This document shows, piece after piece, positions 19,257-47,320 of a stretch of 64,000 nt of DNA. Within the stretch, counting starts at the first letter, position 1. Each line of letters starts with the position of its first letter. The notes under the pieces are model-generated. The model was not told the origin of the DNA. It ran no database searches and saw only the letters and a list, made by a program, of their open reading frames with translations. The stretch covers positions 224,034 to 288,033 of the forward strand of contig NIVC01001449.1 of assembly GCA_002269645.1 (NCBI GenBank). The letters are read 5' to 3'. Made by a program: the position numbers and the translations under genes. The stretch is from Macrostomum lignano (lineage: Eukaryota).

Positions 19257-20336
19257 ATGAGATCTGTCTTAAGTCCTAAAACTGCTCAAACCAGGACCGA
19301 GCCAGGCTCCACCGAAGCCTCACCGCTGAGCGCCCTCAACGTTGTCCGACTCGCCTTGGAGGCGGTCATCTCGGCCACCGCCATCGCGGGCAACTCTCTC
19401 ACGGTGGCAGTCGTAATGTTGAACCCGACCATGCGCAAGCCAACCAACTACCTGGTAGCCAATCTGGCTGCTACGGATTTCCTCGTTGGCAGCGTGGCCA
19501 TCCCCATCTCCCTGGTCTCAGAGAATGGCTTTCCAAGAAATGATTTCAATGGCTGCCTAATTTTAAACTCTTTAATAGTAAGTCTCACCCAGGTGAGCAT
19601 ATTCGGCATGCTGGCAATATCGCTGGAACGATTCACAGCCGTATTCATGCCACTGAGGTACCGGCGTCTCAGCTCGAGTCGGTGGATCTCCATCATTTGC
19701 CTGGCGACCTGGCTGGCAGGCCTACTGGCTGGGAACCTGCCACTGATGGGCTGGAATCTGGGCCCTCCTGCCAACGGTCAGTGCAGCTTTGTGGCTGTCA
19801 TCGACATGAATTTCATGGTTTATTTCAACTTCTTCGTGTGCGTCCTGCCTCCGCTGCTTGTTGTCGGCGTTGTGTACGGCTGCATCTTCAAGGCTCTCAT
19901 AGACAGAGCCAGTGCTCAAGTAGAAAGCGTAAAAGCTCAACGAGGTGATTCTGAGTTCTGTTCCGCCAATAGAACTGCAGTTGACGCTGCTGGAAGTAAC
20001 GATAGCAACCAAGGAGGCAAGCTTTCACTCAGCGAGCGCAGAGCAGCAAGGAGCCTCGCTGTAGTTGTGCTTCTCTTCTTCCTGTGTTGGCTGCCGCTGC
20101 ACTGCCTCAACGCTGTCAGCCTGATGTGCTCGGAGGCCTGCGCCTACCCGTACGAGCTGCTTGTTGGCGCAATTCTGCTGAGCCACGCCAACAGCGCCGT
20201 CAACCCGTTTGTGTATGCCCTGTCCAGCACGCAGTTCCGCTCCGCCTACAGGCGGCTGCTGCAGCTCCCAAAGTGCTGGCGACGATGCAGCACCGCCGTT
20301 GGGCCGACTGTGATAATGCGTCTTGAAAGCACCTGA
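19257..20336 (+). CDS. AdoR: Class A GPCR, adenosine receptor-like, intronless 7TM core
   Basis: GN, TNYLVANLAATD, LERF, CWLPLH, NPFVY motifs; adenosine-receptor signatures LTQxSIF, MNFMVYFNFF..VLPPL, LSHANSAVNP; true N-terminus could lie upstream. Confidence 0.88.
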   Translation: MRSVLSPKTAQTRTEPGSTEASPLSALNVVRLALEAVISATAIAGNSLTVAVVMLNPTMRKPTNYLVANLAATDFLVGSVAIPISLVSENGFPRNDFNGCLILNSLIVSLTQVSIFGMLAISLERFTAVFMPLRYRRLSSSRWISIICLATWLAGLLAGNLPLMGWNLGPPANGQCSFVAVIDMNFMVYFNFFVCVLPPLLVVGVVYGCIFKALIDRASAQVESVKAQRGDSEFCSANRTAVDAAGSNDSNQGGKLSLSERRAARSLAVVVLLFFLCWLPLHCLNAVSLMCSEACAYPYELLVGAILLSHANSAVNPFVYALSSTQFRSAYRRLLQLPKCWRRCSTAVGPTVIMRLEST

Positions 20337-27616: not shown

Positions 27617-30600
27617 TGTCGCGGAATTCATTCATTTACTCATTCATTCAGTGCATATGTACCTGTGTGTACGGTGGTGGTTGTTTAGCCTAATATCGAT
27701 TTATTTGCCGCTTTCAAACCACCCCCCTCTGTTTGTGCGCTGTGCCGCCTCCCCCCGCTTTCCTACCCTTCTTATCTCTCTCCTAGCCTATCTAGCCCCC
27801 CCCCACCCCCCAAATTTTCACTCACCATTTTTAATACAAAATATATTGACCGTGCAAGGCCTTTCGTGCCTATCGTTTGTTTTTTCCGTTGCTCATCCTA
27901 AAGTTAAACAAATCGACTCCAAAATAACAACATGGCGCCCAATGGAAATTACTGAAGAATTCAACCTGGCTCAAAATCTAGCATTAGAAGCTCATTTCGA
28001 CTAACCAAACTCGACCTCAACTCCGGCCCAGCTCAACATTCTCTGCAGTTCGCTGTTCTAGCCGTCTGCACTCGACAGTGGCTCGCTCCTGGTTCAACCG
28101 GCTTCTGCCGTGGCGGTCACGGTCTCCGCTCGACCGCACATGATTTCACATCATAGCACGGGCCAACTTCGTGGCGTTCTGGAACCAGGGGCTCTCATCT
28201 CATCGTTGGATTCGAGCCGGTGCTGCTGGCTTCTGACTCTGCACGGCTTGCGGTAGATTGACTCTATGTGCTTGTTTTTTCGATGTTCTTTTTCCTATTC
28301 GCATACTACTCGTAGTTTGTCTCTTGCCCTCTTGTCCTCTCTTTTCCACCTTTGTCTCCGTTTGGTCGCTTAGACGTTCTTTAGTCGGGATTCTCGCTGC
28401 CGGTTTTCTCTGTGTTCTCGTTGTCGTTCGCATCTCAATCATGGTTCTCTCAGAAGATGAATTGGCAGCTGCTGTCCGGAAACGGGCGGGCATTCGGTCT
28501 AGCGTTACTAAAGCGGTCGGCAAAGTGCAAGTGCTGTTGGACAGGGGTTTGCAGAGAGAAGTCGAAGTCGCTGAGGCGGCTGCGTATCTCGAGGTGTTCA
28601 ATTCGAAGCTCAGTATATTGAGGCAACTGGACGATGCGATAGACGAGTCTCTTGCAGATGAGCAGTTAGAGTCGGAGCGCGATGATTGTGAGCGCTATGG
28701 GCTGCAGTGTCTCACTTGCATCAAAAGGTTAGAAGCTGCTCTTTCTCGTAATTTTAAATCTCAGGCGAGTTCGCCTCCCACTCAGTCGCAGCAACCTCAA
28801 GTCAAGCTCCCTAAGCTGCAGGTTCCCACGTTCGATGGGCAGGTTTCGACATGGCAATCATTTTGGGATCAATTCGATTCCTCGATCAATTCAAACACCT
28901 CACTTTCTGAAATTGACAAGTTTAATTATCTCGTGGCCTCTCTGTCTGAGGCGGCAAAGTCATGCATTAGAGGCCTGGCTGTCACTGCTGACAACTATTC
29001 CACTGCGGTGGATATTCTAAAAGAGCGCTTTGGCAAACCCGAGGTGGTTGTCAAGGAGTTAATGCATAAAATCTCGGAGCTTCGCCTGTCTGATACATCC
29101 CTGCGCTCTCTGCAGCAATTTCACGATGACATTTCTGCTGCCATGCGTAGCCTGAATGCTCAGGGTGTCTCTGCCAATTCTTACGAGTCACTTTTGGTTC
29201 CATCGCTGATGAGCAAGTGCCCATCAGCCTTCCGGTTAGAGCTCCTGAGAGCCGCGCGAATGCAGGGATCGGACATTAATTCACTGGAGAGCCTCTTGCA
29301 ATCGCTAAAGCAGGAAATTACGGTTCGCGAAAGTGCTGGGCAAGGGCAGTTCCTGAGTTCGAAAGAGTCGACGAAGTCCTCATCACCTGCTGGCTCTAGC
29401 AGTAGCAAAGCTTCTCCACGGCATTCGTCTGTCTCGACTCTGGTGACACTTCAGCCGAAGGCGTCCAAACAGGCCTCTTCGAAGATCTTCTGCACCTACT
29501 GCAAAGGCTCACACTCGTCTGAGTCCTGTACCAACCTCGTTTCCGCTGATCAGAGACGGGCCTTTCTTGCGTCTGAGAAGCGCTGCTTTAGGTGCTTGCG
29601 CCTGGGACATTTGGCACCTCAATGCAAAGATCCGAGACCATGTCGGGGCTGCTCAGGTAGACACCATGTCAGCATCTGCATTAAAAATTCACAGGCAGGC
29701 AGGGAGTCAGATAAGCCATCCACGTCCGCCAAGAAACCAGCTTCGCCGCCGAATCAGTGCTTAGCATCTGTGACAGAGTCTTTTGCCTTCACAATGTTGA
29801 TTTCTGACAATCCGGCAGTGGCTCTGCCCGTTGCCAAAGCCATTTTGCTCAGCACAGATGGTCGCCGGGAAATGATGGTGCGTGTTCTGTTTGACACGGC
29901 CAGTAATCGCAGCTACATTCGTCAGGACATTTGTGACCTGCTGGGCATTCAGGCGAATTCACTGGAACGGCTTAACGTCTCGACGTTTGCTGGAAACAGC
30001 ACTGCTCTGCAGTCTGGTAGTGCTAACATCGCATTACGCAAAATGGATTCTTTCGAAGTGATCTAGATTCGTACAAATATCGTCGAGACAATATGTCAAC
30101 CACAACATTCAGTCAAAGTGACAGGGTTCGAACACCTGCACTCTCTAGATTTAGCGGATCCATACGATCCTCGGGATCAGCACACGCCTATATCTATTCT
30201 AATAGGATCAGACTTCTATTACCAAATCGTGGGTGACACGGTGGTGCGTGGAGACTCTGGCCCAGTGGCCATCTCATCAAAGCTGGGGTTTCTATTATGC
30301 GGCCCCCTCGCTACTGGCATCAACAATACATGTAGTGCTAGTATAGGCAACTCGATCGAGTCTAGTGTTCCCAATGAGGACACCTGCGCTTTAGCTCTAT
30401 GCTGCTCAGTTTGCGAGAATCTCTCACTGGAAGCTTCACACACACGAGACATTTCGACTCTCTGGAAATTAGAGTCTATTGGGGTCCTAGATGATCCGGG
30501 CCCCAACTCGGAGTCCTCGTTTTATTGCAATCCTCAGCTTCGGGATGGACGCTATTCCGTCCAGCTACCATGGTCTCTGCCAAAAGAGTCCATTATACTC

Positions 30601-33600
30601 ACTGACCACTTTGATTTGTCTTTTCGGCGACTGATATCGACCAGACGTCAACTGGAACGCGATCAGACTAAGCTGGCCCAGTGCGAAGCCATCATCGCAG
30701 AGCAAGAGGCTCTTGGCATCATTGAGAGAGTCCCTGTTAGTAACTCTAGTAGTAGCCTGATTCACTATCTTCCTCACAGCTGTATTTCCAAAGCAGAAAG
30801 TGAGCACACAAAACTTCGCATTGTGTTTGATGGGTCAGCTCGAACTCATTCAGCTGACTTTGCAATTAATGACCTACTTCAAGTTGGTCCGACGACTTTT
30901 CCGCAAATTCCACAAATTCTCATTAGGTTCCGAATGAAGCCGATAGCAGTCTTAGCTGACATCGAAAAGGCCTTTCTGCAGATTGGCATTGAGAAGAGTG
31001 ATCGGGATTCGCTCCGTTTTCTCTGGACTCAGGGTCAGTCGGGTGCTCAGGAGGTTATTCATTATCGGTTCTGCCGTCTGCCCTTTGGGCTTACGTGCTC
31101 GCCTGGGGTGCTTCGGGCAACCATTTTGCACCATCTCGAACTGCACCAGAACGATTTTCCGGGTGTTGTAGACACTCTGAAACAGGATCTGTATGTAGAC
31201 AATCTAGTTACTAGTTGCGACTCTGTAAAGGACGCAACTTCGCTCTACGAACAAGCGAAGCAAGTTTTTAGCTTAGCAGGGATGAACTTGAGACAGTGGC
31301 AGTCAAACTCTGATGGCTTTACAGCCCACTTGCCGGTGGCAGACGTCAGCAAGGCTTGTAAGGTTTTAGGCCTACCTTGGGATGCCCAGACAGACACGCT
31401 TCACTTTAACTTTCGCTCACTGCTAGATTCCATCCCGGATCGGCCTCACTCGAAGCGGTCAATGCTCGCCGTTCTTGGCAGAATTTTTTATTCTGCCTAC
31501 TGTCACCGGCTGTGACTATTGTCAAGATTTGGTTTCAGCTGTGCAGCCGGAAATTGACGTGGGACGAACAGCTTCCTACTGACATTGCTTCGCAGTGGTC
31601 TCGCTGGCTGGCCTCGCTTCAGGAGACGCACCTGACCGTTCGCCGTTACGTTATGCCAGACACTGCTGAAGCCGAACACCTTGAGGTTCAACTGCATGGT
31701 TTTTCCGACGCCAGTGAGCGAGCATACGCCGCTGCCGTCTACCTTCGGGTGATTGACCATGTCCGTCGCAGTGCCTCAACTGTTCTTATCATGGCGAAGT
31801 CTCGCATCGCTCCTCTCACAGTCATCAGCATTCCTCGTTTGGAGCTTCTTGGAGCGCTGATTCTTGCTCGGTTGATGGACTTTGTTTCCTCACAATTTCC
31901 GGGTGTACGGAAACAGCTGTGGACCGACAGCATGACCACACTGCAGTGGATCACCCAGGAAACTCGAATTCGTCCAATCTTCGTTCACAATCGTGTCACG
32001 GAAATTCGCAGACTCTCCTCGGTTGTGGATTGGCGATATGTCCCGGGGGAGAGCAACCCAGCAGATATTCCTCCAGAGGTTGCTTTCCCGATAAGCTTGT
32101 GAGCAATCCTATGTGGCTGGACGGCCCCTCTTTCCTGCACTCTTACGAGCTTCCATATGACCCAGGCATCTTCTTCAGATCTTGAACATTCACGACTACT
32201 CGTCATGGCCGAAGCTAACTCGCGTGGTTGCCTGGGTGCGCCGCTTTATCAGCAACGCGCGAGCGGCAGCAAAAAAATTCACCCAACAACAGCAGCGGTC
32301 TCTGACTACTGCAGAAGTTGTCGACGCAGAAACGTCGATTCTTCGCGCTGCTCAACAGATTTTTCTTGGGCCAGAACTCAAGCACTTACAAGGTGCTGGT
32401 CCTCGTACGCCACTGGTTCAACAACTGCAACTATTTCTTGGCGACGATGGACTCATCCGTTCCAAAGGGCGGCTCGCTGATGCCGTGCCTTTTGATACGA
32501 ATCACCCCGTGCTGATTCCTGGGAAGACACATATTGAACTGCTCATCATCCGGCACTGTCACCAGGCTGTTTTCCACGGGGGAGTGCCTGCAACTCTGTG
32601 CAAAATTCGAGAACGCTTTTGGGTTTTGAAGGCTCGACAGCGGGTGAAACAGGTTCTCTCTACGTGTGTGACGTGCCGGAAGCTTCAGGGTCAGCCCTTC
32701 ACGGTCACTCAGGTTCCGCAACTTCCTCCGTTCCGTTTGTCTGATATCAGAGCCTTTCAGACTGTGGGATTGGACTATGCTGGTCCGATCTATTATCGGA
32801 CGGGGGAGGGTGACAACTCTGCTAACTCGTACATTCTTCTTTTCACATGTGCAGCGACTCGTGCTGTGCACCTTGAGTTGGTGACCAGCATGGGAAGCGA
32901 TCAGTTTCTGCATGCTCTGCGCCGCTTCGTGGCACGTAGAGGCATTCCGTCAATCGTTAGCGACAACGCCAAGACCTTCCGTGCAACTGCCAGTGTGATC
33001 GGTGCTGAAGTGTCTAAGGAGCTTCAGGAGTTTTGCACGTCGAAGCGAATCACCTGGCACTTCATTCCTGAGCAGGCCCCGTGGTGGGCAGGTTTCTGGG
33101 AGAGGTTGATTGGTGTCATCAAGATAGCCATTAAAAAAGCCGCCGGTCGTCAGTTATTCACGTACGATCAGTTATTAACTCTGGTGATGGAAGTGGAGGC
33201 GGTTGTCAATAGCCGTCCGCTGCTGTATGTAGCGTCAGGAGAGACGATAGAAGTCATTACGCCGTCTCATTTTATTGTGACAGCTCGTCTCACTCAGGAG
33301 CCTGAAGTCAGTTTGGGTCCTGAACTGATGTTGCCTTTGCCTCAACGGTTCAAAATGCTCCGTGCAGCCTTGAACTGGTTTTGGGACCAGTGGAAGGGAT
33401 CATATCTCGAAGCTCTCCGCGAGAAGTCGTCTAAGCGTCATTCGCAAGGTCGCTCACCGACGGTTGGTGAAGTGGTACTGATTTCGGGCGAGCCCCGGCA
33501 ACCCAGGTTCCATTGGAAGTTAGGGGTTGTCGAGGAGGTCAAGGCAGGTCGCGATGGAGTTGTTCGCTCTGCGGTCGTGAGGATTTCGGGAGCGGGTGAT

Positions 33601-34376
33601 CCCCGGCGACGGGAACGTCTGAGGCGACCCGTTCAAGCTCTCATTCCGCTCGAATTCAAAGTTCCCAACTAAAATTTGCATCAATCCTCGGCAGTTTGTG
33701 CTCAGACAGCGCTATTTGCTTGTGAAGTTTAAGCGCAAGTCATTATTTTTTTCTTTTTTCTTCATAATCTGTCGTTTTGTTTACTCAATAACCTGTTGTG
33801 CTCAAAAAATCTTTTTCATTGATATTTCCTATTTGTTCAACTCAGCCTCCTGCTCATATTTATAACGTTTAAAATTTAAACTACGAGCGTAAAAGTATAA
33901 CTTAACGAATGAAAACATTTATTCATTCGTAGTTTCGGTTTTGCGGGGTGGTGGTTAATGCTCCATTAGTCTTTGCTATTTTCAAACATGCCCAAATGTT
34001 TCCGAGTTCATTCATTCATTATAGTTCATCCATTATCGCAAATGACAAGTCATTTGGGGGAGTGTCGCGGAATTCATTCATTTACTCATTCATTCAGTGC
34101 ATATGTACCTGTGTGTACGGTGGTGGTTGTTTAGCCTAATATCGATTTATTTGCAGCTTTCAAACCACCCCCCTCTGTTTGTGCGCTGTGCCGCCTCCCC
34201 CCGCTTTCCTACCCTTCTTATCTCTCTCCTAGCCTACCTAGCCCCCCCGACCCCCAAATTTTCACTCACCATTTTTAATACAAAATATATTGACCGTGCA
34301 AGGCCTTTCGTGCCTATCGTTTGTTTTTTCCGTTGCTCATCCTAAAGTTAAACAAATCGACTCCAAAATCACAACA
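27617..34376 (+). mobile_element. BEL/Pao LTR retrotransposon, full length
   Basis: LTRs 27617-27932 and 34063-34376 (TG..CA, few differences); TSD GTCTG at 27612-27616 and 34377-34381; PBS TGGCGCCCAA at 27933; GGGGGAG purine tract. Confidence 0.97.
28441..33672 (+). pseudogene. BEL/Pao gag-pol polyprotein with one in-frame stop and two frameshifts
   Basis: DUF1759-type gag (LPKLQVPTFDG..WQSFWDQF), three Zn knuckles, protease LFDTAS, RT (LADIEKAFLQI, LYVDN), RNase H (FSDAS, WTDS), integrase (LDYAG, SDNA, GFWERL); TAG at 30064; shifts near 31495 and 32085. Confidence 0.94.
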
Positions 34377-37300: not shown

Positions 37301-38995
37301 TAACTTCTGTTCCTTAGTAGTACATACAATATATGTTTCAGCCTACTTCACTTAATTCACTTTAGAAAATAAATCAACTTAGAAAACAATCTTCAATAAT
37401 ATTTACTTGTAACTCTTACTATTTGATACTAGCTTTCTTTCCTAAGGAACCACAATGCGCAAGGTTGTTCTTGTTCTCTCCTCCGCTGAAAAATGCTTCT
37501 ATTTGTACTAAATTTATATGTAGGCCTAGAGTTAACAGTTAAACAAAAATTGTATTTGCAAAAAATATTATAGAAAATGCATGCAGTATAATAAATCATT
37601 TTTCTTAGTTTTGGCACGTATTCAAACATATTAAAATTGTAGAAATATGAAATTGAAGATTGCAGGTGCCCATTACATAAGTTCAACATATAAAATAAAT
37701 GGTGTAGGACCAAGACCGCCACACACCAAGACCGCCACACTTGGGGGAGCTAGGGGGAGGAATTTGGCTCGCCATGTTATTGGATGGTGCTGGGGGAGGG
37801 GTGAGATGGGGACGACAAGGCCGCGAGAGAGGAACCGGTGAGCGGGCCGGGCGGACCTGAGTGAGCCTTCCTCGTTTTTTCAATCAATTTGAATTGTAAA
37901 GGAACTATCAATCCTAAATAAACAGCTACTATTAGTAGAAAGCTGTGAAAAAAGGCTCTTGACTTAACTGCATTCTTAATTCGCAGTTTCGAATGTGGTC
38001 CTTGAGTTGGTTATCATTGTTATAATTTGTTATAATGTGAGTTTTCATGTGTGATTCGAGCATGTCCGATTGCCAATGCAAATTTGCCAATTCGATCGCA
38101 GGCAGGCAGGCTAACATGCACTTGTATTTAGAGGTTACGGGATGGTGAGTCGTGCAGCCATACCGTTTTTATTGCGTGTACATGTACAGGCTTCCTATAA
38201 AAACGACACTAAAGTAGTCCGTGATTTGTACGAGCTGGGCCTCGATCGAGTTGTACGAGGCCTGTTATAAGCAGCTTTCATGCTCACTTTAAATCACTCA
38301 ATCACTAACTCACTCACTCTCTCACCCTCTACATGTATCTTACTCGCTCACTCACTCACTTGCACACTGATCACTCACTCAAAAGTTACTCTAATCGCTC
38401 TTAATACAATCAAAATGTATGGCACGAAAATGCATGCACATCACATGTACAGTAATCGTTTACTTTGATTTCGGATGTTCTCCCTGTTTATTAAAAAATA
38501 CGTTCTAAAACTATTTGAACAAATATTAGCTACAATTGTACATTTGTACTGTACATCACATTGGCTACCAGTGTATACTCGTGCATGTAACATGCAGTTC
38601 TGATCCCTACCATACAACAGACGGACAGTCATATCGCTACACTTGATTTTAATTTACCATGCAATCAATTGGCAATGATCGACCTGGTACACAGTATGCG
38701 CATTGTGTGATAGATACATGTATATCCATGCTCTTTACAGCTAAATTGGATCAGGAAATCATCTCTCGAGGTCAGGGGTGGTCGGAACCAGGGGTCACGG
38801 GGGGCTGGAGCCCCCCCCCCACTTTTTAGCATGATCCATCAAGTGCCCTTTTTGAATTTTAAGCAAGTGTCGGCCGGTTTTCGGCTTTGGCTTTTCTGAG
38901 TCTTGGAAGCTAAGGGCTGATATAAAAGTTAATGTTGTTCTGAATCCCATTCACTACAGTTTTATCTAATGTGCCTAAGCCTAGTGCTTTTAGTG

Positions 38996-39035
38996 CAGGG
39001 GTCAGCAAACTTTTTACCTCAAGGGCCAGATTAAG
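38996..39035 (+). mobile_element. hAT-like terminal sequence (CAGGGGTCAGCAAACTTTTT..AAGGGCCAGAT)
   Basis: Resembles common hAT/Charlie-type MITE ends; partner end not found. Confidence 0.35.
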
Positions 39036-39348
39036 AACCTAGCGTGGCGCAATGACTGCCCTTCTGGGTCTGCTTCCGTGGGCCCCCTAAGCGAAACGTG
39101 CCCAGGAGTCCCTGATGATTGCAGGCAAGAGAAGGGAGAGGATAGGGAATAGAGAAGAGAACTATACGAGTACGATCGTAGGAGAAAGGAGAGGCTAAGG
39201 AATAAAGGAGAAGAGAGTAGACGAGAAAAGAGATAAAATAGGAGAGGGGAGATGAATGAGGAGAGTCGAGATATAAGAGAGAGGAGAGAACGAGGGAAGG
39301 GAGAAGAGAATGGAGAGGAAAAGGAAGATGAGAGCTGATACGAGCTAA

Positions 39349-39806
39349 GAGAGGAGAGGAGATGATAAGAGAGGAGAGATGAGAGGAGAGAACAGAGAAG
39401 AGTGGAGAGGAGAGGAGAGGAGAGGAGAGGAGAGGAGAGGAGAGGAGATAGGTGAGGAGAGGAGAGGAGAGGAGAGGAGAGGAGAGGAGAGGAGAGGAGA
39501 GGAGATAGGTGAGGAGAGGAGAGGAGAGGAGAGGAGAGGAGAGGAGAGGAGAGGAGAGGAGATAGGTGAGGAGAGGAGTGGAGAGGAGAGGAGAGGAGAG
39601 GAGAGGAGAGGAGAGGTGAGGAGAGGAGAGGAGAGGAGAGGAGAGGAGAGGAGAGGAGAGGAGAGGAGATAGGTGAGGAGAGGAGAGGAGAGGAGAGGAG
39701 AGGAGAGGAGAGGAGAGGTGAGGAGAGGAGAGGAGAGGAGAGGAGAGGAGAGGAGAGGAGAGGAGATAGGTGAGGAGAGGAGAGGAGAGGAGAGGAGAGG
39801 AGAGGA
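39349..39806 (+). repeat. (GGAGA)n satellite with periodic GGAGATAGGTGA variants
   Basis: Seen directly; produces the spurious LLSSP and EERRG ORFs. Confidence 0.97.
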
Positions 39807-39949
39807 CAATTTCACAAACTGATATAGCTAACATCAGGAGTTTGGGTGCCCTTAGATTAAAAGAAATTATGTGCAATGTGCCCTCCCAACAATAGCCCCC
39901 CCCACTTTGAAATATTTTCCGACACTGCTGCTCGAGGTCTCTCTTTAAT

Positions 39950-40445
39950 TCTCTCACACTCTCTCCACTCTCACCCTCTCTCCACTCTCACCCTCTCTCC
40001 ACTCTCACCCTCTCTCCACTCTCACCCTCTCTCCACTCTCACCCTCTCTCCACTCTCACCCTCTGTCCACTCTCACCCTCCCTCTACTCTCACCCTCTCT
40101 CCACTTTCAGCCTCTCTTTACTCTCAGCCTCTACTCTCAGTCTCTTTCAACTCTCACCCTCTCTCCACTTTCAGCCTCTCTTTCAACTCACCCTCTCTCC
40201 ACTCTCACTCTCTCTCCACTCTCACCCTCTCTCCACTCTCACCCTCTCTCCACTCTCACCCTCTCTCCACTCTCACCCTCCCTCCACTCTCACCCTCTCT
40301 CCACTCTCACCCTCTCTCCACTCTCACCCTCTCTCCACTCTCACCCTCCCTCTACTCTCACCCTCTTTCAACTCTCACCCTCTCTCCACTTTCAGCCTCT
40401 CTTTCAACTCTCACCCTCTCTCCACTTTCACTCTCTATCCACTCT
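39950..40445 (+). repeat. CT-rich minisatellite (CTCTCCACTCTCACCCT-like)
   Basis: Seen directly. Confidence 0.92.
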
Positions 40446-40446
40446 C

Positions 40447-40516
40447 CGAGAAACAATGGGTGAGAAACAGTGGGTGAAACAGTGGGTGAAACAGTGGGTG
40501 AAACAGTGGGTAAGAA
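40447..40516 (+). repeat. 12-bp tandem (GAAACAGTGGGT) x~5 upstream of the transposase
   Basis: Seen directly, about 200 bp upstream of ATG 40716. Confidence 0.85.
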
Positions 40517-40715
40517 ACGCTCTTCCAAAAATGCCAGAACTCTCATTGGCTGGGCGCTCATCAAATAGCAGTTATCCTCCACTGATACGGCCCCGAATTT
40601 GAATTTTCTGTTTATCTAGCTCGTATAATTGTATTAGAATAGCATATCTATACAATAAAAACTGATTATCTGAAATCGGAGCTTAAATAGTTTTTGATCA
40701 AGAAATATCATTAAA

Positions 40716-42575
40716 ATGGCAGGTGCATACCCATGTGTAGTGTGTGTACAGCCTGTTGTCAATGGAGAAGAAGCTATTGAGTGCTCGCAGTGTAGCGAAT
40801 GGCAGCATCGTGCGTGTAACAGTCGCGTTACACCGGAGCAGTACGCTGCGATGAAACGTGTACGCGAGTTTTTCTGGCTGTGCAACCGATGCCTTAGGCC
40901 AACTACAGGTGTGCCTTCATCTGCACCCTCAGCTGCCCCAGCAGCTACTGTGCCGCCAACCTTTCCAGGATCAGGACCAGGTGGTGAGCCTATTGACCAA
41001 GAGGAGCCATTGCTTCCAGTCCCTCATGTAGAAGTGGAAGAGAGGTTTTTATTTCAGTATCCCGATTTCGCTGACGCTGAACCTGTGCTCGAAGAATCAA
41101 TTCACGAGCCTCCAGCAGAGTTGGCGCCGCCTCGTAGCCCACCTCCGCAGGCTTTTGAGCATTTTCCAGGTGCTGGATTCAGCCACGGCAAAGACTTGCT
41201 GGTGCAGTACGTCAGGCGTGATCTTGGCCGCTTGATGCATGTCAAGAGCCGGCGAAACGGCAACACTTACTACCGTTGCAACAAAACTGCACCGAAATGC
41301 CTGGGCTCAGCCGTCAAGCGACAAGACGGAACCATTGAAGCCTTGAAAGAGCACACCTGCGATCCAGTCGATCAGCCAGTTAAAAAACGACGTATTGCAG
41401 CTCAGGTAAAAGCGGAAGCAAAGCGAGCGCCATTCAAATCTGCTCGCATCATCGCTGAGGAGAAAGTAAGAGAGCTCCCCCAAGAAGTGCAGGCAGTGAT
41501 TAATATAGATTCCTTAAGTCGCAATGCTAATTATTCTCGTAAAAAAAGCCGCCCCGCGGAGCCAGCTAACATCCATTTTCAGGTTGATCCCGAGCACGTG
41601 CCCCCAGAGTTCCATTTGCAGGACGTTACTGTGCCAGAGACAAATGGACGGCACTTTGTCTTCATGTCTGCGACACAACGGGAGATCCTGTCCACACGAC
41701 GCATTCTGCACTGCGATGGCACATTCGGCATTGTCAAGGCGCCTTTCATGCAGCTGTACAGCCTTCATGGAGCCATTCGCTGCGACAATCAAGAGCGTCT
41801 GGTACCACTGGCATTCTTTCTGATGTCAGGTAAGGCTCAGGCTGACTACCAAGCCTGCTTCCGGCAGGTATGGGAGTTGACTGGTAATGCACCTGTCCAA
41901 TTTATCTGCGACTTTGAGTCGGCCGCCTGGCAAGCCATTCGGCTAGTTTATCCAGCAGCCCAAGTTCGTGGCTGCTTTTTTCATTACTGCCAGGCTGTTT
42001 TCAGGCGAGTCCAGTCTCTTGGATTGCAGGTGCAGTATGCGACTTCCCCTGCGGTAAAGTTATTAGTACGCATGCTGCTTTCGATTCCTTGTCTGCCGGC
42101 TCCTTGCATGCTAGATGGCCTTGCAGCCTGCACTGCAATGGCAGGAGAGAATCAGCGCCTTCTAGAGCTAACGGAATACGTGCGTGCAACCTGGCTACAG
42201 CACCCTGTGTGGGACCGGGATGCCATCTGCGTCTTTGAGCGGTTCACAAGGACGAACAATGCCGTGGAGGCTTGGCACGCGCAGCTCAACAAGCGTGGAG
42301 AGAAAGCGCTTAATTTCTATCTTCTGCTGACCCTGCTTCAGCGTGATGCAGAGCGGGTGCAACGTCTGCTGCAGCAAGTTCATCAAGGCCAAGCTGTCAC
42401 GCACCACCAGCAAGTACATGCTAGGTACGCGCGAGTGAATGTCTGCTTTGAGACATTCTGCCGACACCTGAGAGAGGGCACTATGTCGATTGCTGCATTT
42501 CTCCGGGCCTGCAGCCATATTCATGCGCAACCTGGATGGCAGCAAGAGGGCGAGGATGATGCGCAGCAGAATTGA
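40716..42575 (+). CDS. PHD finger-FLYWCH-like-MULE DDE transposase (619 aa, intact)
   Basis: C4HC3 PHD (CVVC..IECSQCSEWQHRAC..WLCNRC); YYRC..C..EHTC Zn module; DDE triad CDGTF / CDFE / TNNAVE; CFFH motif. Confidence 0.92.
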   Translation: MAGAYPCVVCVQPVVNGEEAIECSQCSEWQHRACNSRVTPEQYAAMKRVREFFWLCNRCLRPTTGVPSSAPSAAPAATVPPTFPGSGPGGEPIDQEEPLLPVPHVEVEERFLFQYPDFADAEPVLEESIHEPPAELAPPRSPPPQAFEHFPGAGFSHGKDLLVQYVRRDLGRLMHVKSRRNGNTYYRCNKTAPKCLGSAVKRQDGTIEALKEHTCDPVDQPVKKRRIAAQVKAEAKRAPFKSARIIAEEKVRELPQEVQAVINIDSLSRNANYSRKKSRPAEPANIHFQVDPEHVPPEFHLQDVTVPETNGRHFVFMSATQREILSTRRILHCDGTFGIVKAPFMQLYSLHGAIRCDNQERLVPLAFFLMSGKAQADYQACFRQVWELTGNAPVQFICDFESAAWQAIRLVYPAAQVRGCFFHYCQAVFRRVQSLGLQVQYATSPAVKLLVRMLLSIPCLPAPCMLDGLAACTAMAGENQRLLELTEYVRATWLQHPVWDRDAICVFERFTRTNNAVEAWHAQLNKRGEKALNFYLLLTLLQRDAERVQRLLQQVHQGQAVTHHQQVHARYARVNVCFETFCRHLREGTMSIAAFLRACSHIHAQPGWQQEGEDDAQQN

Positions 42576-42687
42576 TCGCGATCTCTCCGTTTTGCCTGAT
42601 TCAAGTGGAAACTTTTAATAATTAACCATTTTACTTAAATCGAGTTATAAATCTCAATTCATTGCTTGCTTAGCAAATAGCTCCCTC

Positions 42688-42930
42688 ATTATCATTTTTC
42701 GCACACCATTATATTCTGCACTTTTATTTCAGTCCATATGCGGCGCACAGGTAAAGCTATTAATTATTACCTTCTAAATGCCATCATTTTTCGCATGCCA
42801 TTACATTCTGCACTTTTATTTCAGTCCATATGCGGCGCACAGGTAAAGCTATTAATTATTACCTTCTAAATGCCATCATTTTTCGCATGCCATTACATTC
42901 TGCACTTTTATTTCAGTCCATATGCGGCCC
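42688..42930 (+). repeat. 92-bp tandem repeat, ~2.6 copies
   Basis: CTTTTATTTCAGTCC recurs at 42721, 42813 and 42905. Confidence 0.9.
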
Positions 42931-43172
42931 ACGGGTAAAAAAGAAAAAATCTGCGTATTCGCTAAATTTGCTTGCATCTTATCCACTGCCCCTCCAGTTT
43001 TATTTCACTGCACCCCCTGCTGGATTGTGGAGGCGGGGGCACATTTGGCTTGTGAGCGCGAATAACAAGATCTTAAACTTTTACACCGTGCTTAAAGCGA
43101 AATGTGCTGCCAGCTCCATAGGTCATCTCGAGCCCGAACTCCAAGTGGCACTTATTTATACTTAATCTCTAA

Positions 43173-43405
43173 TCCAAATATGCTAAATCTCTAAGGTTTG
43201 TTTGCTTGCTTGCTTGCTTGCTTGCTTGTCCATAAAGCTCTACAGCTCACTGTCCTTGACCGATTTTCTTAAAATCCAAATATACTAAATCTCTAATATT
43301 TGTATGTTTGTCCATAATCTAAATATACTAAATCTCTAAGATTTGTATGTTTGCTTGTCCATAGCGCTCTAGTCTAAATATACTAAATCTCTAATAATAT
43401 GCTAA
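43173..43405 (+). mobile_element. Four tandem Helitron-like 5' ends
   Basis: TC(C/T)AAATAT(A/G)CTAAATCTCTAA at 43173, 43275, 43318 and 43373; (GCTT)n microsatellite; ACCGATTTTCTT motif shared with Helitrons A/B; one CTAG|TC junction at 43369-43374. Confidence 0.6.
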
Positions 43406-45642
43406 AATTACTATATCTGCTTGTACTAATGAGGTAGAACTACTAGATTGCATAATCACTGTTTAAACTGCGCACAGAATAGCTTGCGCAAAAAAGTTCA
43501 AATTTAATTTCAATACACGACCCCATCTCTGTTTGTGATCCCTCTCTACTACATCTTTGTCTCTCCTTCTGATAGTTTAAATCAAAGCGACTTCTTTTCC
43601 AGCTTTGCATAACACTATCATAAATTAGCTACTCCAGCAATAGCATATTGCCAGGCAAGGTAACAAAAATTTATCACTTTTTTAGAATGAATGCATTGAC
43701 AGCTTGCTTGGTTAGCCAACTGTCTCAGGGTTCTTATTAAATCAAGACAGGAAGCAAATACTCTCCACCCAGTTACCACGAATAGATCGTATAGTAACAA
43801 AAACAGCTGTACTTAACTTGTTATCTCTTATAGGTTCTGAAATTCATCGCTTATAGGCTACATGCAACGGCCGTGCATTTTTAAAATACCAAGCCATAAA
43901 TCTTAAACGGAACGAGGGGCGCACTCAAAAAAATTTAGGGGGGGGGGGGTGTTACGGAGAGAGGTGGCACTGGCAAGAGGGGGCAGACCCCGGAATTTTC
44001 CTCCCTTGACCCCTCCCCCTCTGGGTGCAACCCCTGAACTGCATGGACTCGAGTCGAGCTTAAAAAAACTGTTTGTATATATAACTGTGAGTTCCAATTA
44101 CTGTACTGAGTTCAAAAGGAGGGCACAAAAAAGATTTGGATAGTAACGGATTTTTTACGAGGGGCCGGCGTTTGAGATATAGCTATCAAATATTTCAAAA
44201 TAGCTGCGGGTATTCAATATAGTGTGATCAGATTGAATTCAATTAAATTCTGAGCAACGTACGAGCGTATGTGGGCGTGGCATCTACATTGCAGTTGGTG
44301 TTCCCATGTGTAATAGTGCAACCAAGCGAGGTCCCTGGAGCGAAAACCTGGATCTGCCAAGTACAGCATGAGCATGAGGTCATGACCTCAGAAGTACATG
44401 CAAACTTTGATGGGACTAAAAGAAGTCTATCTAAAATAAAAAATGATTGTGCCATTGGTCCGATCTTATGGTATTTTGCATATTTCGCATGTCCGATACT
44501 AGCTACAACTGTACTAACAGATGAATGCAAGCATTTTGCAAAAGTATGCAACCATTGTTTTCTAACAATTTGTTCGCAAATCTCCCTTCGATCTGCCCTA
44601 TCCACTGATATCTTCAAGTTTGCATATTTTTCACCTAATTCAAGCATCTCCACCGCATGGACTCCCGAAATATAAACGGAGCGCATCACACCGCAATACT
44701 TATTTGCGAGCGGCAAGGCTCAGACCACAGTTTGCAGTGCTTTAAAAACGGCTTTTTGATTTCGCAAATATTTCCTTTTTGCATAACGCTGAATGTGATT
44801 TCAGCTGCAAAAATTTGACTGCTATTGATAATTCCTGATCGGCTAGAAAAAACGTCACAGATAGATTGGAAAACGTGTACATGTACATGTACCTTGCACT
44901 CATATGCACATACGTGCATCTCTGTATTACATTTATTACATTAAATGTATCAAGAAGTTTGGTATATTTTGAAGAGATGTCAGAATTGTCAAAATCAGTA
45001 TTTATCGATCAGTACCCTTTGAAAAAATGCATGTACATGTAGCTCACACTGTACCTGTGCAAAGTTGCCGCAGTGCGCGAGAGTAAAGGATATTTGCATT
45101 TAAAAATCGGAGGCAAAAGATCAAATGTGTGAAAAATTCTGTAATTTATTATAGTGCCTGAAATTCAGAAATGAATTAAAAGCGAGAGAGTGAGTGACTG
45201 AGTGAGTAAGAGAGTGAGAGTGAGAGAGTGTGTCAGTGTGGGAGTGGGTGTGAAATGAGTGAGACAGAGAGAGTGAGAGTGAGAGAGATCGAGATCTCTT
45301 AACCCCTCTCCATATATTCTCTCATTACATGTGCATGTAAATTTACTCTCATCCCCTCCCTTTGCTTTCTCCGAAATTCCCGGCTTTGAGTACACAATAA
45401 AATACACACAGTGCTCGTGCTCGTACATTTCCAGACATGTAACATATCATGCATAGGCATTGGGCCTAAGATGCGCTTTTTCTGTTATGTGAGTGAACGA
45501 TAGTTGTTAACTTGCTTTCGTCAAAATACATGTAAACCTTCGTCAAAATGAATGACACCTCTAAATCCACATACCATAGCACATATCAAGACGCTTAGAT
45601 TTGTTTGTCCGTAATGCACTACGCACCCAGACGCCGAATATA

Positions 45643-46021
45643 GGGTCTCCCTAAAACACGCACCGCCCCGCCCCGAACCGCTACACATTATAACATTTTT
45701 TGTCAACGCAGTATTTGATTGCAAAGAAAAATATTTGTTGTACGAGTAATGGAATAAATATCTTTAATTATTATTATAAATACTGTTATTATTTTTTATA
45801 TTCTCGTTTTCATTATTAAATTTTATTAATATTTTTTATTAATATTATTAATATTATCACTTATTATTCACCGAATTTTATATTTCATAGTAAAAAAACT
45901 TAATTTAATAAAAACTTTAAAGCTTAACAGAAAACGCATTTTCAAGTGTCTTCAGTTATAGTCCAATTTGTTTTAATGTGTAGCGCTGCAGGGCGGTGCG
46001 GGGCGTGTTTTAGGGAGACCC
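45643..46021. mobile_element. MULE-type MITE (379 bp)
   Basis: ~50-bp TIRs GGGTCTCCCTAAAACACGC..; perfect 9-bp TSD CCGAATATA at 45634-45642 and 46022-46030; AT-rich interior. Confidence 0.9.
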
Positions 46022-47320
46022 CCGAATATACGAATGTGCGAGCTCGTAAAAAACTTTTCAAATTACAGCAACCTGCAATTGCATTTTGAGAGGCGCTTTT
46101 TTGAAAGTGAAGTTAAATCTAATTACTCAAGCTTTTGCTCTCAAAAGCATTATTCATGCTCATCTACTGCTAAAAGTAACAAATTGTGGTTTTGTTAAAG
46201 ATATTGTTAAAATTGCCTGGTTGACTTGCAATCGTTTTGGGCCACTTATTCGTGACCAATCTTGGGACGCTTCCTCCTCATCTAACTCCACAACCCATCA
46301 CAACCAATAGCAATGCTGGAAGATTAGTAGCTCCCCCTCAATTCCAGTAGCCAGTAAGAGCTGTGGCGGTCTTGGTGTGTGGCGGTCTTGGTCATGCGCC
46401 AAATAAATTTCAACTTTAATAATTTAAGTAAATCCTATCTCTAAAAATGTTTGTAATTTTTTATGTAAATGAAATAAAAAACATTAATTATATTGCTATT
46501 TTTTAAATATTATCTACTATAATAAACTTCAGTAGGTCTAGTCAAGATATTATCATTAGCATTTTAAATTACTTATATTTTAGAGTATAGGCCTAATTTA
46601 AGTTAAGCTTATTTAGTCTTTTTTGCACTTTTGACATAATAGTTCTATTTTTTATTTTTTAGGGGGCCTATGAAATTATTATTTGTAATATGTAATATAT
46701 TAAATTATCTATTGTAAAACCTAAAGTGATGCTTTTTATATATTATTTCTATGATTTGAATGAACTAATATATTTATTTAATAGGTCTATTTTTATCTTA
46801 TTTTATCTTAAAGATAATCAAATTTTAGCCGAGAATTTTTGCCTAATTTTTGTTGTCCTTTTTATAAAATATATTATTTAGTAACTCTAAAGTTTTTCAC
46901 TTAAAATTTTTTACTACTGTAATTCTTATTTCTTACATTTTGTGTCTTGTTTATGACATTAAATGACATTAAAAATTAAGTTCAATTATATTAAATTTTA
47001 AACATTTATAGAATGTCTTGCTTCACTCAAGTCTCATACTAGGCATTCAAATTGTCTATTCCTACTACTCAGTGCTCACTCCCTATGCTCAGTGCTAACT
47101 CTGCTCAATGCTTGCTCTATCTGCTCAGTGCTAAACCTCCTGCAACTTGCTTCACCCCCTCTGCAACCTATATACAAATTATTTGCCAAGTGTTTCGCAT
47201 ACATGATGCACTGTACTTAAAGTACCTCTTGCTAGTTGTAGAGCTCAAAAAATTATAAATATCTATTGACTATCTAAAATATTACAACCCGTGTATCCAG
47301 CTAATCAAGACCAATTGAAA

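What the first reader, a model, noticed from the sequence alone, without database searches (positions are those of the whole stretch)
40716..42575. Intact Mutator transposase with an N-terminal PHD finger
Seen: a complete C4HC3 PHD (with the N-terminal Tyr and the Trp of CxxWxH that form the aromatic cage in H3K4me3 readers), a Pro-rich linker, a FLYWCH-like Zn module and a full DDE core, in an unbroken ORF. Known: some MULEs (e.g. Rehavkus) carry PHD domains, and RAG2 uses a PHD to target H3K4me3. Inference: a possibly active, chromatin-targeted transposase, or a domesticated gene.
Basis: partly seen in the sequence, partly recalled or inferred. Interest (0 to 1): 0.7.

Follow-up and report, generated by a model that had tools for sequence, protein, structure and literature searches.

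The report
Mutator transposon with Pygopus-type PHD finger
The ORF is the intact transposase of a complete 8.7-kb Mutator-type "jumping gene" in an animal genome, and it carries a histone-tail-reader domain like that of the Wnt co-factor Pygopus; this design is widespread in marine invertebrates but I found no paper describing it.

Summary
Window 40716-42575 (+) is an unbroken 619-aa ORF with four parts: an N-terminal C4HC3 PHD, a 23%-Pro disordered linker, a FLYWCH-type CCHC zinc module, and a full MULE catalytic core (D334, D399, C420xxH423, W493, E518).

It is a transposon gene, not a domesticated host gene. It sits inside an 8,700-bp element (37701-46400) bounded by 39-nt terminal inverted repeats and a perfect 8-bp target-site duplication (AAATAAAT).

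Four related loci from other genomes carry the same PHD, FLYWCH and MULE parts inside TIR- and TSD-bounded elements. In three of them the TIRs are tandem 16-nt units, and in two the unit sequence resembles the window's.

It is not Rehavkus: Rehavkus DDE profiles do not detect it, and Pfam MULE does not detect Rehavkus. The architecture is Phantom-type (FLYWCH+MULE) with an added Pygopus-family PHD (TM 0.80-0.85 to Pygo crystal structures). Most Pygo histone-pocket residues are kept, and the PHD is under purifying selection.

Histone binding and chromatin-guided integration are plausible but untested. The family is old and widespread (molluscs, crustaceans, cnidarians, echinoderms, nemerteans, lancelets), is labelled only "uncharacterized", and was not described in the literature I could search.

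Verdict: a new variant of a known kind, of moderate interest.

The parts
37693..37700 (.). Left target-site duplication AAATAAAT (8 bp)
   Evidence: Identical 8-mer directly outside both ends. The chance of an 8-mer match between these flanks is about 7e-5 per offset.
37701..37739 (+). Left terminal inverted repeat: a 7-nt imperfect tip (GGTGTAG) followed by two tandem 16-nt units (G/C)ACCAAGACCGCCACA
   Evidence: the motif occurs only at the two ends in the 64-kb window. The 32-nt core is 32/32 identical to the right arm.
38294..38381 (.). (TCAC)n-like microsatellite, in inverted orientation to the (GAGT)n array at 45184-45288
39229..40518 (.). Block of GA-rich micro- and minisatellites upstream of the ORF: (GAGAG)n at 39349-39806, a 17-mer array at 39951-40446, and a 12-mer array at 40450-40518
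   Evidence: GA/GAGT microsatellites also lie next to the homologous gene in L001 and L005.
40716..42575 (+). Transposase ORF, 619 aa, single exon, end coordinate includes the stop codon
40725..40898 (+). PHD finger (aa 4-61), C4HC3, Pygopus type, with Y5, V14, A20, I21, W29 and Y43 at Pygo histone-pocket positions
40899..41141 (+). Pro/Glu/Ala-rich disordered linker (aa 62-142)
   Evidence: pLDDT below 50 over aa 62-142. 23% Pro and 35% identity to P0001.
41154..41360 (+). FLYWCH/WRKY-GCM1-type zinc module (aa 147-215) with ligands C188, C195, H213 and C215; the presumed TIR-binding domain
   Evidence: Function inferred from Phantom and Muta1 and from Babu 2006.
41613..42005 (+). RNase-H-like catalytic core (aa 300-430) with D334 (41715-41717), D399 (41910-41912) and C420xxH423; W493 and E518 (42267-42269) follow in the alpha-helical region
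   Evidence: Pfam MULE E=2.8e-13. Residues invariant in the family alignment. The fold matches the IS256-family ISCth4 transposase. Signature definition.
42691..42966 (.). 92-bp minisatellite, about 3 copies, starting 116 bp after the stop codon
   Evidence: Minisatellites after the transposase ORF are listed for Phantom and Rehavkus in Dupeyron 2019.
45184..45288 (.). (GAGT)/(GAGAGT)n microsatellite, the inverted partner of 38294-38381
45643..46021 (.). Nested 379-bp MITE-like insertion with 53-nt TIRs (GGGTCTCCC...) and a perfect 9-bp TSD CCGAATATA (45634-45642 and 46022-46030). It is a passenger, not part of the transposase machinery.
46362..46400 (-). Right terminal inverted repeat: two 16-nt units plus an imperfect tip (reverse complement GGCGCAT)
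46401..46408 (.). Right target-site duplication AAATAAAT (8 bp)

Best explanation
The ORF is the transposase of a structurally complete, potentially autonomous cut-and-paste DNA transposon of the Mutator (MULE) superfamily. The element spans window 37701-46400 (8.7 kb) in an unidentified animal genome.

Shown by sequence analysis, not by any activity assay:
- The element has 39-nt TIRs and a perfect 8-bp TSD.
- The protein consists of a Pygopus-type PHD, a disordered linker, a FLYWCH-type zinc finger and a DDE/RNase-H core with every MULE signature residue.
- It belongs to an old, widespread family of TIR- and TSD-bounded elements in marine invertebrates and lancelets. Family members share the PHD and, in most cases examined, TIRs built from tandem 16-nt units.

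Inferred mechanism:
- The FLYWCH finger recognises the 16-nt subterminal repeats in both TIRs.
- The DDE core excises the element through double-strand breaks with hairpins on the flanking DNA, then joins the 3'-OH ends into a staggered target, giving the 8-10 bp TSD. This is as demonstrated for the related Muta1.
- The N-terminal PHD, on a flexible tether of about 80 residues, binds the N-terminal tail of histone H3. Binding is probably favoured by K4 methylation, as in Pygo. It would hold the transposase or transpososome at active, open chromatin and so bias integration towards gene 5' regions.

The PHD was most likely acquired once, early in this FLYWCH-MULE lineage, independently of the PHDs of Rehavkus and of the Ciona/C. 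elegans MULEs.
For: Element boundaries:
- The TIR core is 32/32 identical, and the motif is unique to the two ends in the window.
- The 8-bp TSD is exact, with a chance of about 7e-5 per offset.

Protein:
- Pfam MULE E=2.8e-13 and PHD above the gathering score.
- All eight PHD ligands, three of the four FLYWCH ligands (the fourth is Cys or His) and D334, D399, CxxH, W493 and E518 are conserved.
- The AF2 model has pLDDT 80.4.
- The core's best PDB matches are the IS256-family ISCth4 transposase (E=3.6e-5). The PHD superimposes on Pygo1, Pygo2 and fly Pygo crystal structures at TM 0.80-0.85, rmsd 1.2-1.5 A and 30-33% identity.
- Six of ten Pygo histone-contact positions are identical (Y5, V14, A20, I21, W29, Y43) and two are conservative (M46, F53).
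- W29, V/I14, A20, L/I21 and Y43 are conserved in 35 PHD-bearing relatives.
- PHD pN is 0.34 against a saturated pS of 0.95 versus P0001.

Family:
- 14,165 representative hits, 452 of them at E<=1e-30.
- Named members come from six phyla.
- Many 90%-identity clusters hold 10-21 member sequences.

Transposon structure in four relatives:
- L003: 9-10 bp TSD and 16-nt units that match the window's at 13/16 (p about 0.007).
- L007: 9-bp TSD and 16-nt units that match at 11/16.
- L002: 8-bp TSD and 16-nt units of a different sequence.
- L004: 8-bp TSD and 213-nt TIRs.

The mechanism rests on analogy: Muta1 biochemistry and the role of subterminal repeats, and the definition of Phantom.
Against: - No activity, copy-number or insertion-polymorphism data exist for this genome. 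Only one copy lies in the window, and the exact protein is on record nowhere else.
- At 8.7 kb the element is much larger than its relatives (2.4-5.7 kb). It is full of satellites and carries a nested MITE, so this copy may be old or poorly mobile.
- The outermost 7 nt of the two TIRs differ at 3 positions.
- The FLYWCH match is below Pfam's threshold in this protein, and W is replaced by Y before the first Cys.
- For histone reading, the D352 equivalent is Asn, the E360 equivalent is Ser, and the CxxxC spacing of Pygo is CxxC here. Y/F5 is absent from most family members. Methyl-state specificity, and even H3 binding, are therefore unproven.
- The similarity of the 16-mer to L003 and L007 is only moderately significant (p about 0.007 and 0.04), and there is none to L002.
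Confidence: 0.72

Rival explanations
1. The PHD is not a histone reader. It serves another role instead: a protein-protein interaction (a host cofactor bound on the surface where Pygo binds BCL9 HD1, or transposase multimerisation), binding of unmethylated H3 or another basic tail, or regulation of transposase stability. The transposon identity is unchanged.
For: The equivalents of two Pygo contact residues are changed: D352 to N16, and E360 to S24 with a one-residue deletion. The Y5 cage wall is missing in most relatives. Pygo PHDs are themselves bifunctional, binding both H3 and HD1. W54, equivalent to Pygo W390 on the rear surface, is conserved. Some PHD signatures lack H3 binding altogether; a paper on plant VEL proteins appeared (title and abstract only).
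Against: The residues shown to be essential for H3K4me binding in Pygo are conserved family-wide: W366, V350, A356 and I357, plus Y379 of the T3 pocket. The predicted fold superimposes on histone-bound Pygo structures.
Confidence: 0.3
2. This particular copy is an immobile relic: an intact ORF inside an element that no longer transposes. It may still supply transposase in trans to other copies.
For: The element is 8.7 kb, against 2.4-5.7 kb in relatives. It has satellite expansions and a nested MITE with its own TSD. The TIR tips differ at 3 of 7 positions. Each end has only two 16-nt units, against 3-8 in L002, L003 and L007.
Against: The ORF is unbroken and every catalytic and zinc ligand is intact. 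The TSD is perfect and the 32-nt TIR core is identical at both ends. MULEs up to 10 kb are reported as complete elements (abstract of PMC13359780). The Rehavkus reference elements are 4.9-18.5 kb.
Confidence: 0.35
3. The ORF is a domesticated, host-co-opted PHD-MULE gene, analogous to FHY3/FAR1, MUSTANG or the ZSWIM genes, and acts as a chromatin-associated regulator.
For: The ORF is intact and under purifying selection, including the PHD. NCBI pipelines annotate relatives as ordinary genes, some with introns.
Against: TIRs and a TSD bound the locus. The full catalytic signature is retained. Relatives are multicopy, TIR- and TSD-bounded, and include decayed copies with premature stops. The oyster 'gene' LOC133186965 itself lies between 16-mer TIRs with an 8-bp TSD. 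No non-coding conservation exists with the closest relative's contig.
Confidence: 0.05
4. The element is a member of the Rehavkus group, the catalogued PHD-bearing Mutator-like family.
For: Both have a PHD finger, large elements and minisatellites.
Against: A profile of six Rehavkus DDE domains gives no significant match to the window protein. hhalign gives 3% probability and aligns only the generic D, D and CxxH motifs. Pfam MULE does not hit Rehavkus domains at E<=1, yet it hits the window protein at 2.8e-13. The TSD is 8 bp, not 9. A FLYWCH finger is present, and none is listed for Rehavkus.
Confidence: 0.02

Closest known systems
Phantom subclass of Mutator/MULE transposons (Marquez & Pritham 2010; includes Muta1 of Aedes aegypti and Tm1 of Meloidogyne)
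   Same: [quoted passage not shown] Animal hosts. 8-10 bp TSDs. TIRs with subterminal repeats that matter for transposition. A minisatellite after the ORF in some members.
   Different: An extra Pygopus-type PHD plus an 80-residue linker in front of the FLYWCH finger; the accounts of Phantom that I could read do not mention this. TIRs are built of strictly 16-nt tandem units. The fourth FLYWCH ligand is Cys.
Rehavkus (Repbase group of MULE-like elements with a PHD finger; insects and a leech)
   Same: A Mutator-superfamily DDE transposase that carries a PHD finger. Large elements (4.9-18.5 kb) with minisatellites.
   Different: No detectable DDE-domain similarity beyond the superfamily motifs. 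9-bp versus 8-bp TSD. No FLYWCH finger is listed for Rehavkus. Different host range. The PHDs are therefore independent acquisitions.
Pygopus (Pygo1/2, fly Pygo) PHD finger, the H3K4me2/3 reader of the Wnt enhanceosome
   Same: The best sequence and structure match for aa 4-61 (E=1e-6; TM 0.80-0.85; 30-33% identity). A shared alpha-helix between ligands 6 and 7. Y, V, A, I, W and Y pocket residues are retained. Relatives are placed in Pfam PHD_Pygo PF27108.
   Different: It sits at the N-terminus of a transposase, not at the C-terminus of a transcription co-activator. The D352 equivalent is Asn, the E360 equivalent is Ser, and the third and fourth Cys are spaced CxxC where Pygo has CxxxC. There is no evidence for a BCL9-like partner.
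RAG1/RAG2 (Transib-derived recombinase whose partner RAG2 reads H3K4me3 through a PHD)
   Same: A DDE/RNase-H nuclease that, like MULEs, cleaves via hairpins on flanking DNA, coupled to a PHD histone reader. The RAG2 part rests on established knowledge and was not tested here.
   Different: In RAG the PHD is on a separate subunit and belongs to a different PHD subtype. RAG is a domesticated recombinase, whereas this is a transposon with the PHD fused in cis.
MULE transposases of Ciona and C. elegans with two C2H2 fingers, an insert-type WRKY-GCM1 domain and a C-terminal PHD (Babu et al. 2006)
   Same: A MULE transposase combined with a PHD finger in animals.
   Different: The PHD is C-terminal, the DNA-binding domain is of another WRKY-GCM1 subfamily, and extra C2H2 fingers are present.

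Membership tests
Mutator/MULE superfamily | DDE catalytic triad on an RNase-H-like fold | tested here: met
   D334 on beta1, D399 just after beta4 and E518 on a helix. All are invariant in alignment A4. Pfam MULE E=2.8e-13.
Mutator/MULE superfamily | (C/D)xxH motif 15-45 aa after the second D, and a conserved W upstream of the E (Yuan & Wessler signature, quoted) | tested here: met
   C420-x2-H423 lies 21 aa after D399, and W493 lies 25 aa before E518. All are invariant.
Mutator/MULE superfamily | TIRs and 8-10 bp TSD | tested here: met
   39-nt TIRs and an 8-bp TSD in the window. TSDs of 8, 8, 9 and 9-10 bp in four relatives.
Mutator/MULE superfamily | Structural kinship with IS256-family transposases | tested here: met
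   The top Foldseek hits are ISCth4 complexes (E=3.6e-5, prob 1.00, about 400 aligned columns).
Mutator/MULE superfamily | Demonstrated transposition (excision and reintegration) | not testable with these tools
   Requires a yeast or in-vitro assay, or population data.
Phantom subclass | N-terminal FLYWCH zinc finger followed by a MULE domain (definition quoted) | tested here: met
   The window protein is below threshold (E=0.57). Relatives pass the gathering score at the homologous position, three ligands are invariant and the fourth is Cys or His, and the model shows a beta-sheet module.
Phantom subclass | Phylogenetic grouping with reference Phantom transposases | not tested
   The reference sequences could not be retrieved.
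Rehavkus | DDE domain related to Rehavkus reference transposases | tested here: not met
   The Rehavkus profile does not significantly hit the window ORF, and hhalign gives 3% probability. Pfam MULE does not see Rehavkus.
Rehavkus | 9-bp TSD | tested here: not met
   The TSD is 8 bp, and no 9-bp reading fits.
Rehavkus | Minisatellite just before the 3' TIR | tested here: inconclusive
   The 92-bp minisatellite lies directly after the ORF but 3.4 kb from the 3' TIR.
PHD finger, Pygopus type (Pfam PHD_Pygo) | C4HC3 zinc ligands and the PHD fold with an alpha-helix between ligands 6 and 7 | tested here: met
   TM 0.80-0.85 to the Pygo structures 2vpb, 2vpe and 2dx8. PF27108 is recorded for P0001 and other relatives.
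PHD finger, Pygopus type (Pfam PHD_Pygo) | K4me cage (W366, Y341, D352; base V350, A356) and A1/T3 contacts (I357, E360, Y379, L382, V389) | tested here: inconclusive
   Y5, V14, A20, I21, W29 and Y43 are identical. M46 and F53 are conservative substitutions. N16 replaces D352, and S24 or a gap replaces E360.
PHD finger, Pygopus type (Pfam PHD_Pygo) | Binding to methylated H3 tail; binding to BCL9/Legless HD1 | not testable with these tools
   Needs ITC, a peptide array or a pull-down.
Domesticated MULE-derived host genes (FHY3/FAR1, MUSTANG, ZSWIM type) | Loss of TIRs and TSD; single-copy syntenic orthologues | tested here: not met
   TIRs and a TSD are present. Relatives are multicopy and TIR-bounded. 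Synteny itself could not be examined.

The most novel reading that the evidence does not exclude
An ancient, widespread lineage of animal Mutator transposons encodes, in cis, a Pygopus-family reader of the histone H3 tail that steers a cut-and-paste DDE transposase to H3K4-methylated chromatin. That would be a one-polypeptide counterpart of RAG1+RAG2, and a direct molecular explanation for the preference of Mutator elements for gene 5' ends. It would also imply that the Pygo PHD of Wnt signalling and this transposon PHD share an origin through domain exchange between a host gene and a gene-capturing MULE, in one direction or the other.
Probability: 0.3. Interest if true: 0.7.

Novelty: new variant of a known kind. 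Interest (0 to 1): 0.45.

Why it matters
If the PHD reads H3K4 methylation, this family would be a natural example of a DNA transposase that carries its own histone-mark targeting module. This bears on three questions:

- **How Mutator elements find gene 5' regions.** The bias is known from maize, but no reader domain has been identified there. This point is my own knowledge and was not tested here.
- **How RAG-like systems came to couple DDE cleavage to H3K4me3.**
- **Whether such modules could bias engineered transposon integration.**

The practical outcome is more modest. The finding defines a coherent, widespread transposon family with a PHD_Pygo, FLYWCH and MULE transposase, 8-10 bp TSDs, and TIRs that are mostly tandem 16-nt units. 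This family is currently annotated as ordinary 'uncharacterized' genes in oyster, shrimp, limpet, lancelet and other genomes, and several gene models omit the PHD. The finding also supplies a candidate transposase-binding motif, ACCAARAC..C.ACA.

Tried and rejected
- **First AF2 run.** A two-sequence alignment gave pLDDT 39, which was unusable. It was replaced by a 17-sequence run.
- **Homologue searches with the full-length protein or alignment.** These returned only P0001, probably because the low-complexity linkers swamped the word index. A core-only alignment worked.
- **Exact-sequence look-ups.** The window transposase and the neighbouring GPCR were not found, so the source organism stays unidentified. 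The SRA run of the closest relative is not mentioned in any held paper.
- **The Phantom paper** was not held, and Phantom reference sequences were not retrievable from supplements.
- **Rehavkus membership** was tested and rejected.
- **Viral contigs:** no relatives.
- **Rfam:** nothing in the window.
- **Other ORFs inside the element:** no credible domains, so there is no evidence of a second gene or a captured host fragment.
- **TIRs were not found** around the Palaemon (L005) and Branchiostoma (L006) copies.
- **dN/dS** could not be estimated because synonymous sites are saturated.
- **The bacterial promoter/terminator scan** is irrelevant to an animal gene.
- **The NJ tree** of the family is star-like, so it cannot time the PHD gain precisely.
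Full report
**1. The observation**

The ORF listing finds a 619-aa ATG-to-stop ORF at exactly 40716..42575 on the + strand. Pfam gives MULE (PF10551, aa 331-426, E=2.8e-13) and PHD (PF00628, aa 7-59, 24.4 bits against a cut-off of 24). It gives only a sub-threshold FLYWCH match (aa 171-206, E=0.57).

The single close homologue in a 5.8-billion-protein database is P0001: 633 aa, 48% identical, aligned end to end. It has the same start (MAGAFPC) and the same C-terminal EDDAQ motif. The ORF is therefore complete and intronless.

Alignments show the following (two-sequence; 17-sequence; core-only):
- The eight PHD ligands C7, C10, C23, C26, H31, C34, C56 and C59 are invariant or nearly so.
- A CX6CX17HXC zinc module is present (C188, C195, H213, C215). 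Its fourth ligand is His in most relatives.
- D334, D399, C420xxH423, W493 and E518 are invariant.

These last residues are precisely the MULE/hAT signature quoted by Liu & Wessler 2017: a DDE triad, a (C/D)xxH motif 15-45 aa after the second D, and a W before the E.

The linker (aa 62-142) is 23% Pro, is predicted disordered, and is the least conserved segment.

**2. It sits in a complete transposon**

A tandem-repeat scan showed that a 16-nt unit at 37709-37740 is the reverse complement of one at 46362-46392. The repeat finder and direct reading define 39-nt terminal inverted repeats at 37701-37739 and 46362-46400. Each has a 7-nt imperfect tip followed by two 16-nt units and a 32/32 identical core. 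They are flanked by a perfect 8-bp direct repeat AAATAAAT at 37693-37700 and 46401-46408.

The TIR motif occurs nowhere else in the 64-kb window. An 8-mer match between these AT-rich flanks has a probability of about 7e-5 per offset.

The 8,700-bp element contains only this one credible ORF. The rest is satellites and a nested insertion:
- GA-rich arrays at 39229-40518.
- A 92-bp minisatellite directly after the stop codon.
- Inverted (TCAC)n and (GAGT)n arrays.
- A nested 379-bp MITE with its own 9-bp TSD.

The rest of the window is animal DNA: an intronless rhodopsin-type GPCR, BEL/Pao-like and Gypsy-like ORFs, and a large Endonuclease-VII ORF.

**3. Family and relatives**

An exhaustive profile search of 1.84 billion representatives gave 14,165 hits at E<=1e-3 and 452 at E<=1e-30. 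Relatives pass Pfam's FLYWCH gathering score at the position homologous to the window's zinc module.

A core-only search returned named proteins from:
- crustaceans (Oratosquilla, Palaemon, Portunus);
- lancelets (Branchiostoma);
- cnidarians (Actinostola, Acropora, Dendronephthya);
- many molluscs (Saccostrea, Magallana, Patella, Nucella, Solemya, Mytilus and others);
- a nemertean (Lineus);
- echinoderms (Asterias, Patiria).

All are labelled 'uncharacterized' or 'MULE transposase domain-containing'. Several are annotated PHD_Pygo+FLYWCH+MULE, and many 90%-identity clusters have 10-21 member sequences.

A PHD profile finds the domain in 35 of 256 collected members, always within 25 residues of the N-terminus. 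It is present in 23 of the 55 sequences that have a long enough N-terminus to judge. PHD-bearing members are scattered over the whole (star-like) tree.

Annotation under-counts the PHD:
- In L007 it is a separate 67-aa gene call just upstream of the main ORF, interrupted by a stop at the W54-equivalent codon.
- In the Branchiostoma belcheri locus L006, a PHD is encoded about 550 bp upstream of the gene model.

**4. The relatives are transposons of the same design**

| Locus | Source | TSD | TIR |
|---|---|---|---|
| L003 | ENA contig | 9-10 bp, (T)CCAGCAAAC | four and three tandem units of ACCAAAACGGCCACAA; about 2.4 kb element |
| L007 | ENA contig | 9 bp, GCTTAATGG | eight and six units of ACCAAAACGTCTACAA |
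| L002 | Saccostrea echinata LOC133186965 | 8 bp, ATAAAAAC | three units per end of GTCGGACCATAACAAT |
| L004 | ENA contig | 8 bp, CCCAATAC | 213 nt at 98% complementarity |

The window's unit ACCAAGACCGCCACAC matches the L003 unit at 13/16 positions (composition-preserving shuffle p about 0.007). It matches the L007 unit at 11/16 (p about 0.04). The L002 unit shares only the 16-nt period.

Three conclusions follow. The window's TIRs belong to this transposase. The family is a bona fide transposon family. The 16-mer is the likely transposase-binding site, in line with the role of subterminal repeats in Muta1.

**5. Structure**

With the 17-sequence alignment, AlphaFold2 gives mean pLDDT 80.4 and pTM 0.65. 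The model shows:
- a PHD at aa 4-61;
- a disordered linker at aa 62-142;
- a beta-sheet zinc module at aa 147-215;
- helices at aa 221-278;
- an RNase-H-like alpha/beta core at aa 300-420;
- an all-alpha C-terminal region.

Foldseek against the PDB returns the IS256-family ISCth4 transposase complexes as best matches for the core (E=3.6e-5). IS256 is the bacterial sister of Mutator. For the N-terminal domain it returns the human and fly Pygopus PHD fingers at TM 0.80-0.85, rmsd 1.2-1.5 A and 30-33% identity. A sequence search of the PDB had already ranked Pygo1/2 PHDs first (E=1e-6).

**6. Is the PHD a plausible histone reader?**

Fiedler et al. 2008 define the hPygo1 contacts: K4me2 cage walls W366, Y341 and D352; base V350 and A356; T3 pocket A356, I357, W366 and Y379; R2/A1 contacts L358, E360, L382 and V389.

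Via the alignment these map as follows:

| hPygo1 | Window protein |
|---|---|
| Y341 | Y5 |
| V350 | V14 |
| D352 | N16 (Asp in P0001) |
| A356 | A20 |
| I357 | I21 |
| W366 | W29 |
| Y379 | Y43 |
| L382 | M46 |
| V389 | F53 |
| E360 | no acidic counterpart (S24; most relatives have Asp right after the third Cys) |

Mutation of W366, V350, A356 or I357 abolishes or strongly diminishes H3K4me binding in Pygo. Their equivalents, together with that of the T3-pocket residue Y379, are conserved in nearly all 35 PHD-bearing relatives. The Y/F5 wall is confined to a few lineages, including the window's.

Against P0001, the PHD has pN 0.34 with pS saturated at 0.95, similar to the catalytic core. It has therefore been maintained by selection.

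H3-tail binding is thus plausible. The methylation-state preference is uncertain, and nothing has been measured.

**7. Comparison with known families**

By the published definition, an N-terminal FLYWCH finger plus a MULE domain, the transposase has the Phantom architecture. I could not place it against Phantom reference sequences.

It is not Rehavkus, for four reasons:
- A profile of the six Rehavkus DDE domains from Dupeyron et al.'s supplement does not detect it, and hhalign gives 3% probability.
- Pfam MULE fails to detect Rehavkus domains.
- Rehavkus has 9-bp TSDs.
- No FLYWCH finger is listed for Rehavkus.

Babu et al. 2006 recorded a C-terminal PHD on a different MULE lineage. PHD-MULE fusions are therefore recurrent. 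However, none of my literature searches found a description of an N-terminal Pygo-type PHD on a FLYWCH-MULE transposase.

**8. Verdict**

The interpretation 'transposase of a possibly active element' is supported and strengthened by the TIR and TSD evidence. 'Domesticated gene' is disfavoured. 'Chromatin-targeted' remains a well-motivated hypothesis.

The element is a new variant of a known kind: a Phantom-type Mutator transposon with a Pygo-family PHD. It belongs to an old, widespread family that databases hold only as uncharacterized proteins. Interest is moderate: not surprising in principle, given Rehavkus, chromodomain integrases and RAG2, but a clean and directly testable case of a histone-reader module fused to a DDE transposase.

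Noticed in passing
window 45634-46030: A nested 379-bp MITE-like element (45643-46021) with 53-nt TIRs starting GGGTCTCCC and a perfect 9-bp TSD CCGAATATA. It is inserted inside the right part of the big MULE. The 9-bp TSD suggests that another Mutator-type family has been mobile in this genome.
   Followed up: partly
window 53248-57075 (+): A 1275-aa uninterrupted ORF whose only Pfam match is a Recombination endonuclease VII domain (aa 533-590, E=1e-7). It is unusually long for an intronless animal ORF and may belong to another mobile element.
   Followed up: no
window 28258-33672 (+) and 6537-10430 (+): Two retroelement-like ORF sets. One is BEL/Pao-type (DUF1759, RVT_1, Integrase_H2C2/rve, DUF5641). 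The other is Gypsy-like (RVT_1, Integrase_H2C2/rve) and lies in a GC-rich block (about 6-18 kb, GC 0.50-0.59). The reading frames are split into several ORFs.
   Followed up: no
window 19257-20336 (+) and 58152-59561 (-): An intronless rhodopsin-family GPCR (7tm_1, E=6e-46) and an ORF with an F5/8 type C (discoidin) domain. Both are probably host genes. The exact GPCR protein is not on record in the contig collection.
   Followed up: partly
L002 9662-15357 (Saccostrea echinata JAVQLB010000014.1): The NCBI gene model LOC133186965 ('uncharacterized protein', called with introns) lies wholly inside a transposon bounded by 16-mer-repeat TIRs and an 8-bp TSD ATAAAAAC. It is therefore a transposon gene annotated as a host gene.
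   Followed up: yes
L006 5349-5468 (Branchiostoma belcheri KV411699.1) and L007 5776-5994: The PHD-coding sequence lies upstream of gene models annotated as FLYWCH+MULE only. It is missed in the lancelet model and split off by an in-frame stop in L007. Dupeyron et al. 2019 reported little evidence of MULE transposases in chordates apart from Ciona, yet several Branchiostoma proteins are strong family members.
   Followed up: partly
window 39229-40518; L001 1-40 and 2786-2820; L005 6757-6828 and 8641-8673: GA/CT or GAGT-type microsatellites lie next to the transposase gene in three divergent members of the family. This could be chance, a property of the element, or an insertion or expansion preference.
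   Followed up: no
L003 1-7100, L007 9809-11103: The ENA contigs from sample ERZ25766962 that carry family members are dense with other transposon genes (Helitron_like_N/PIF1, hAT dimerisation domain, RVT_1). Two distinct sub-families of the PHD-MULE, whose 16-mer units match at 14/16 positions, coexist in that sample.
   Followed up: no
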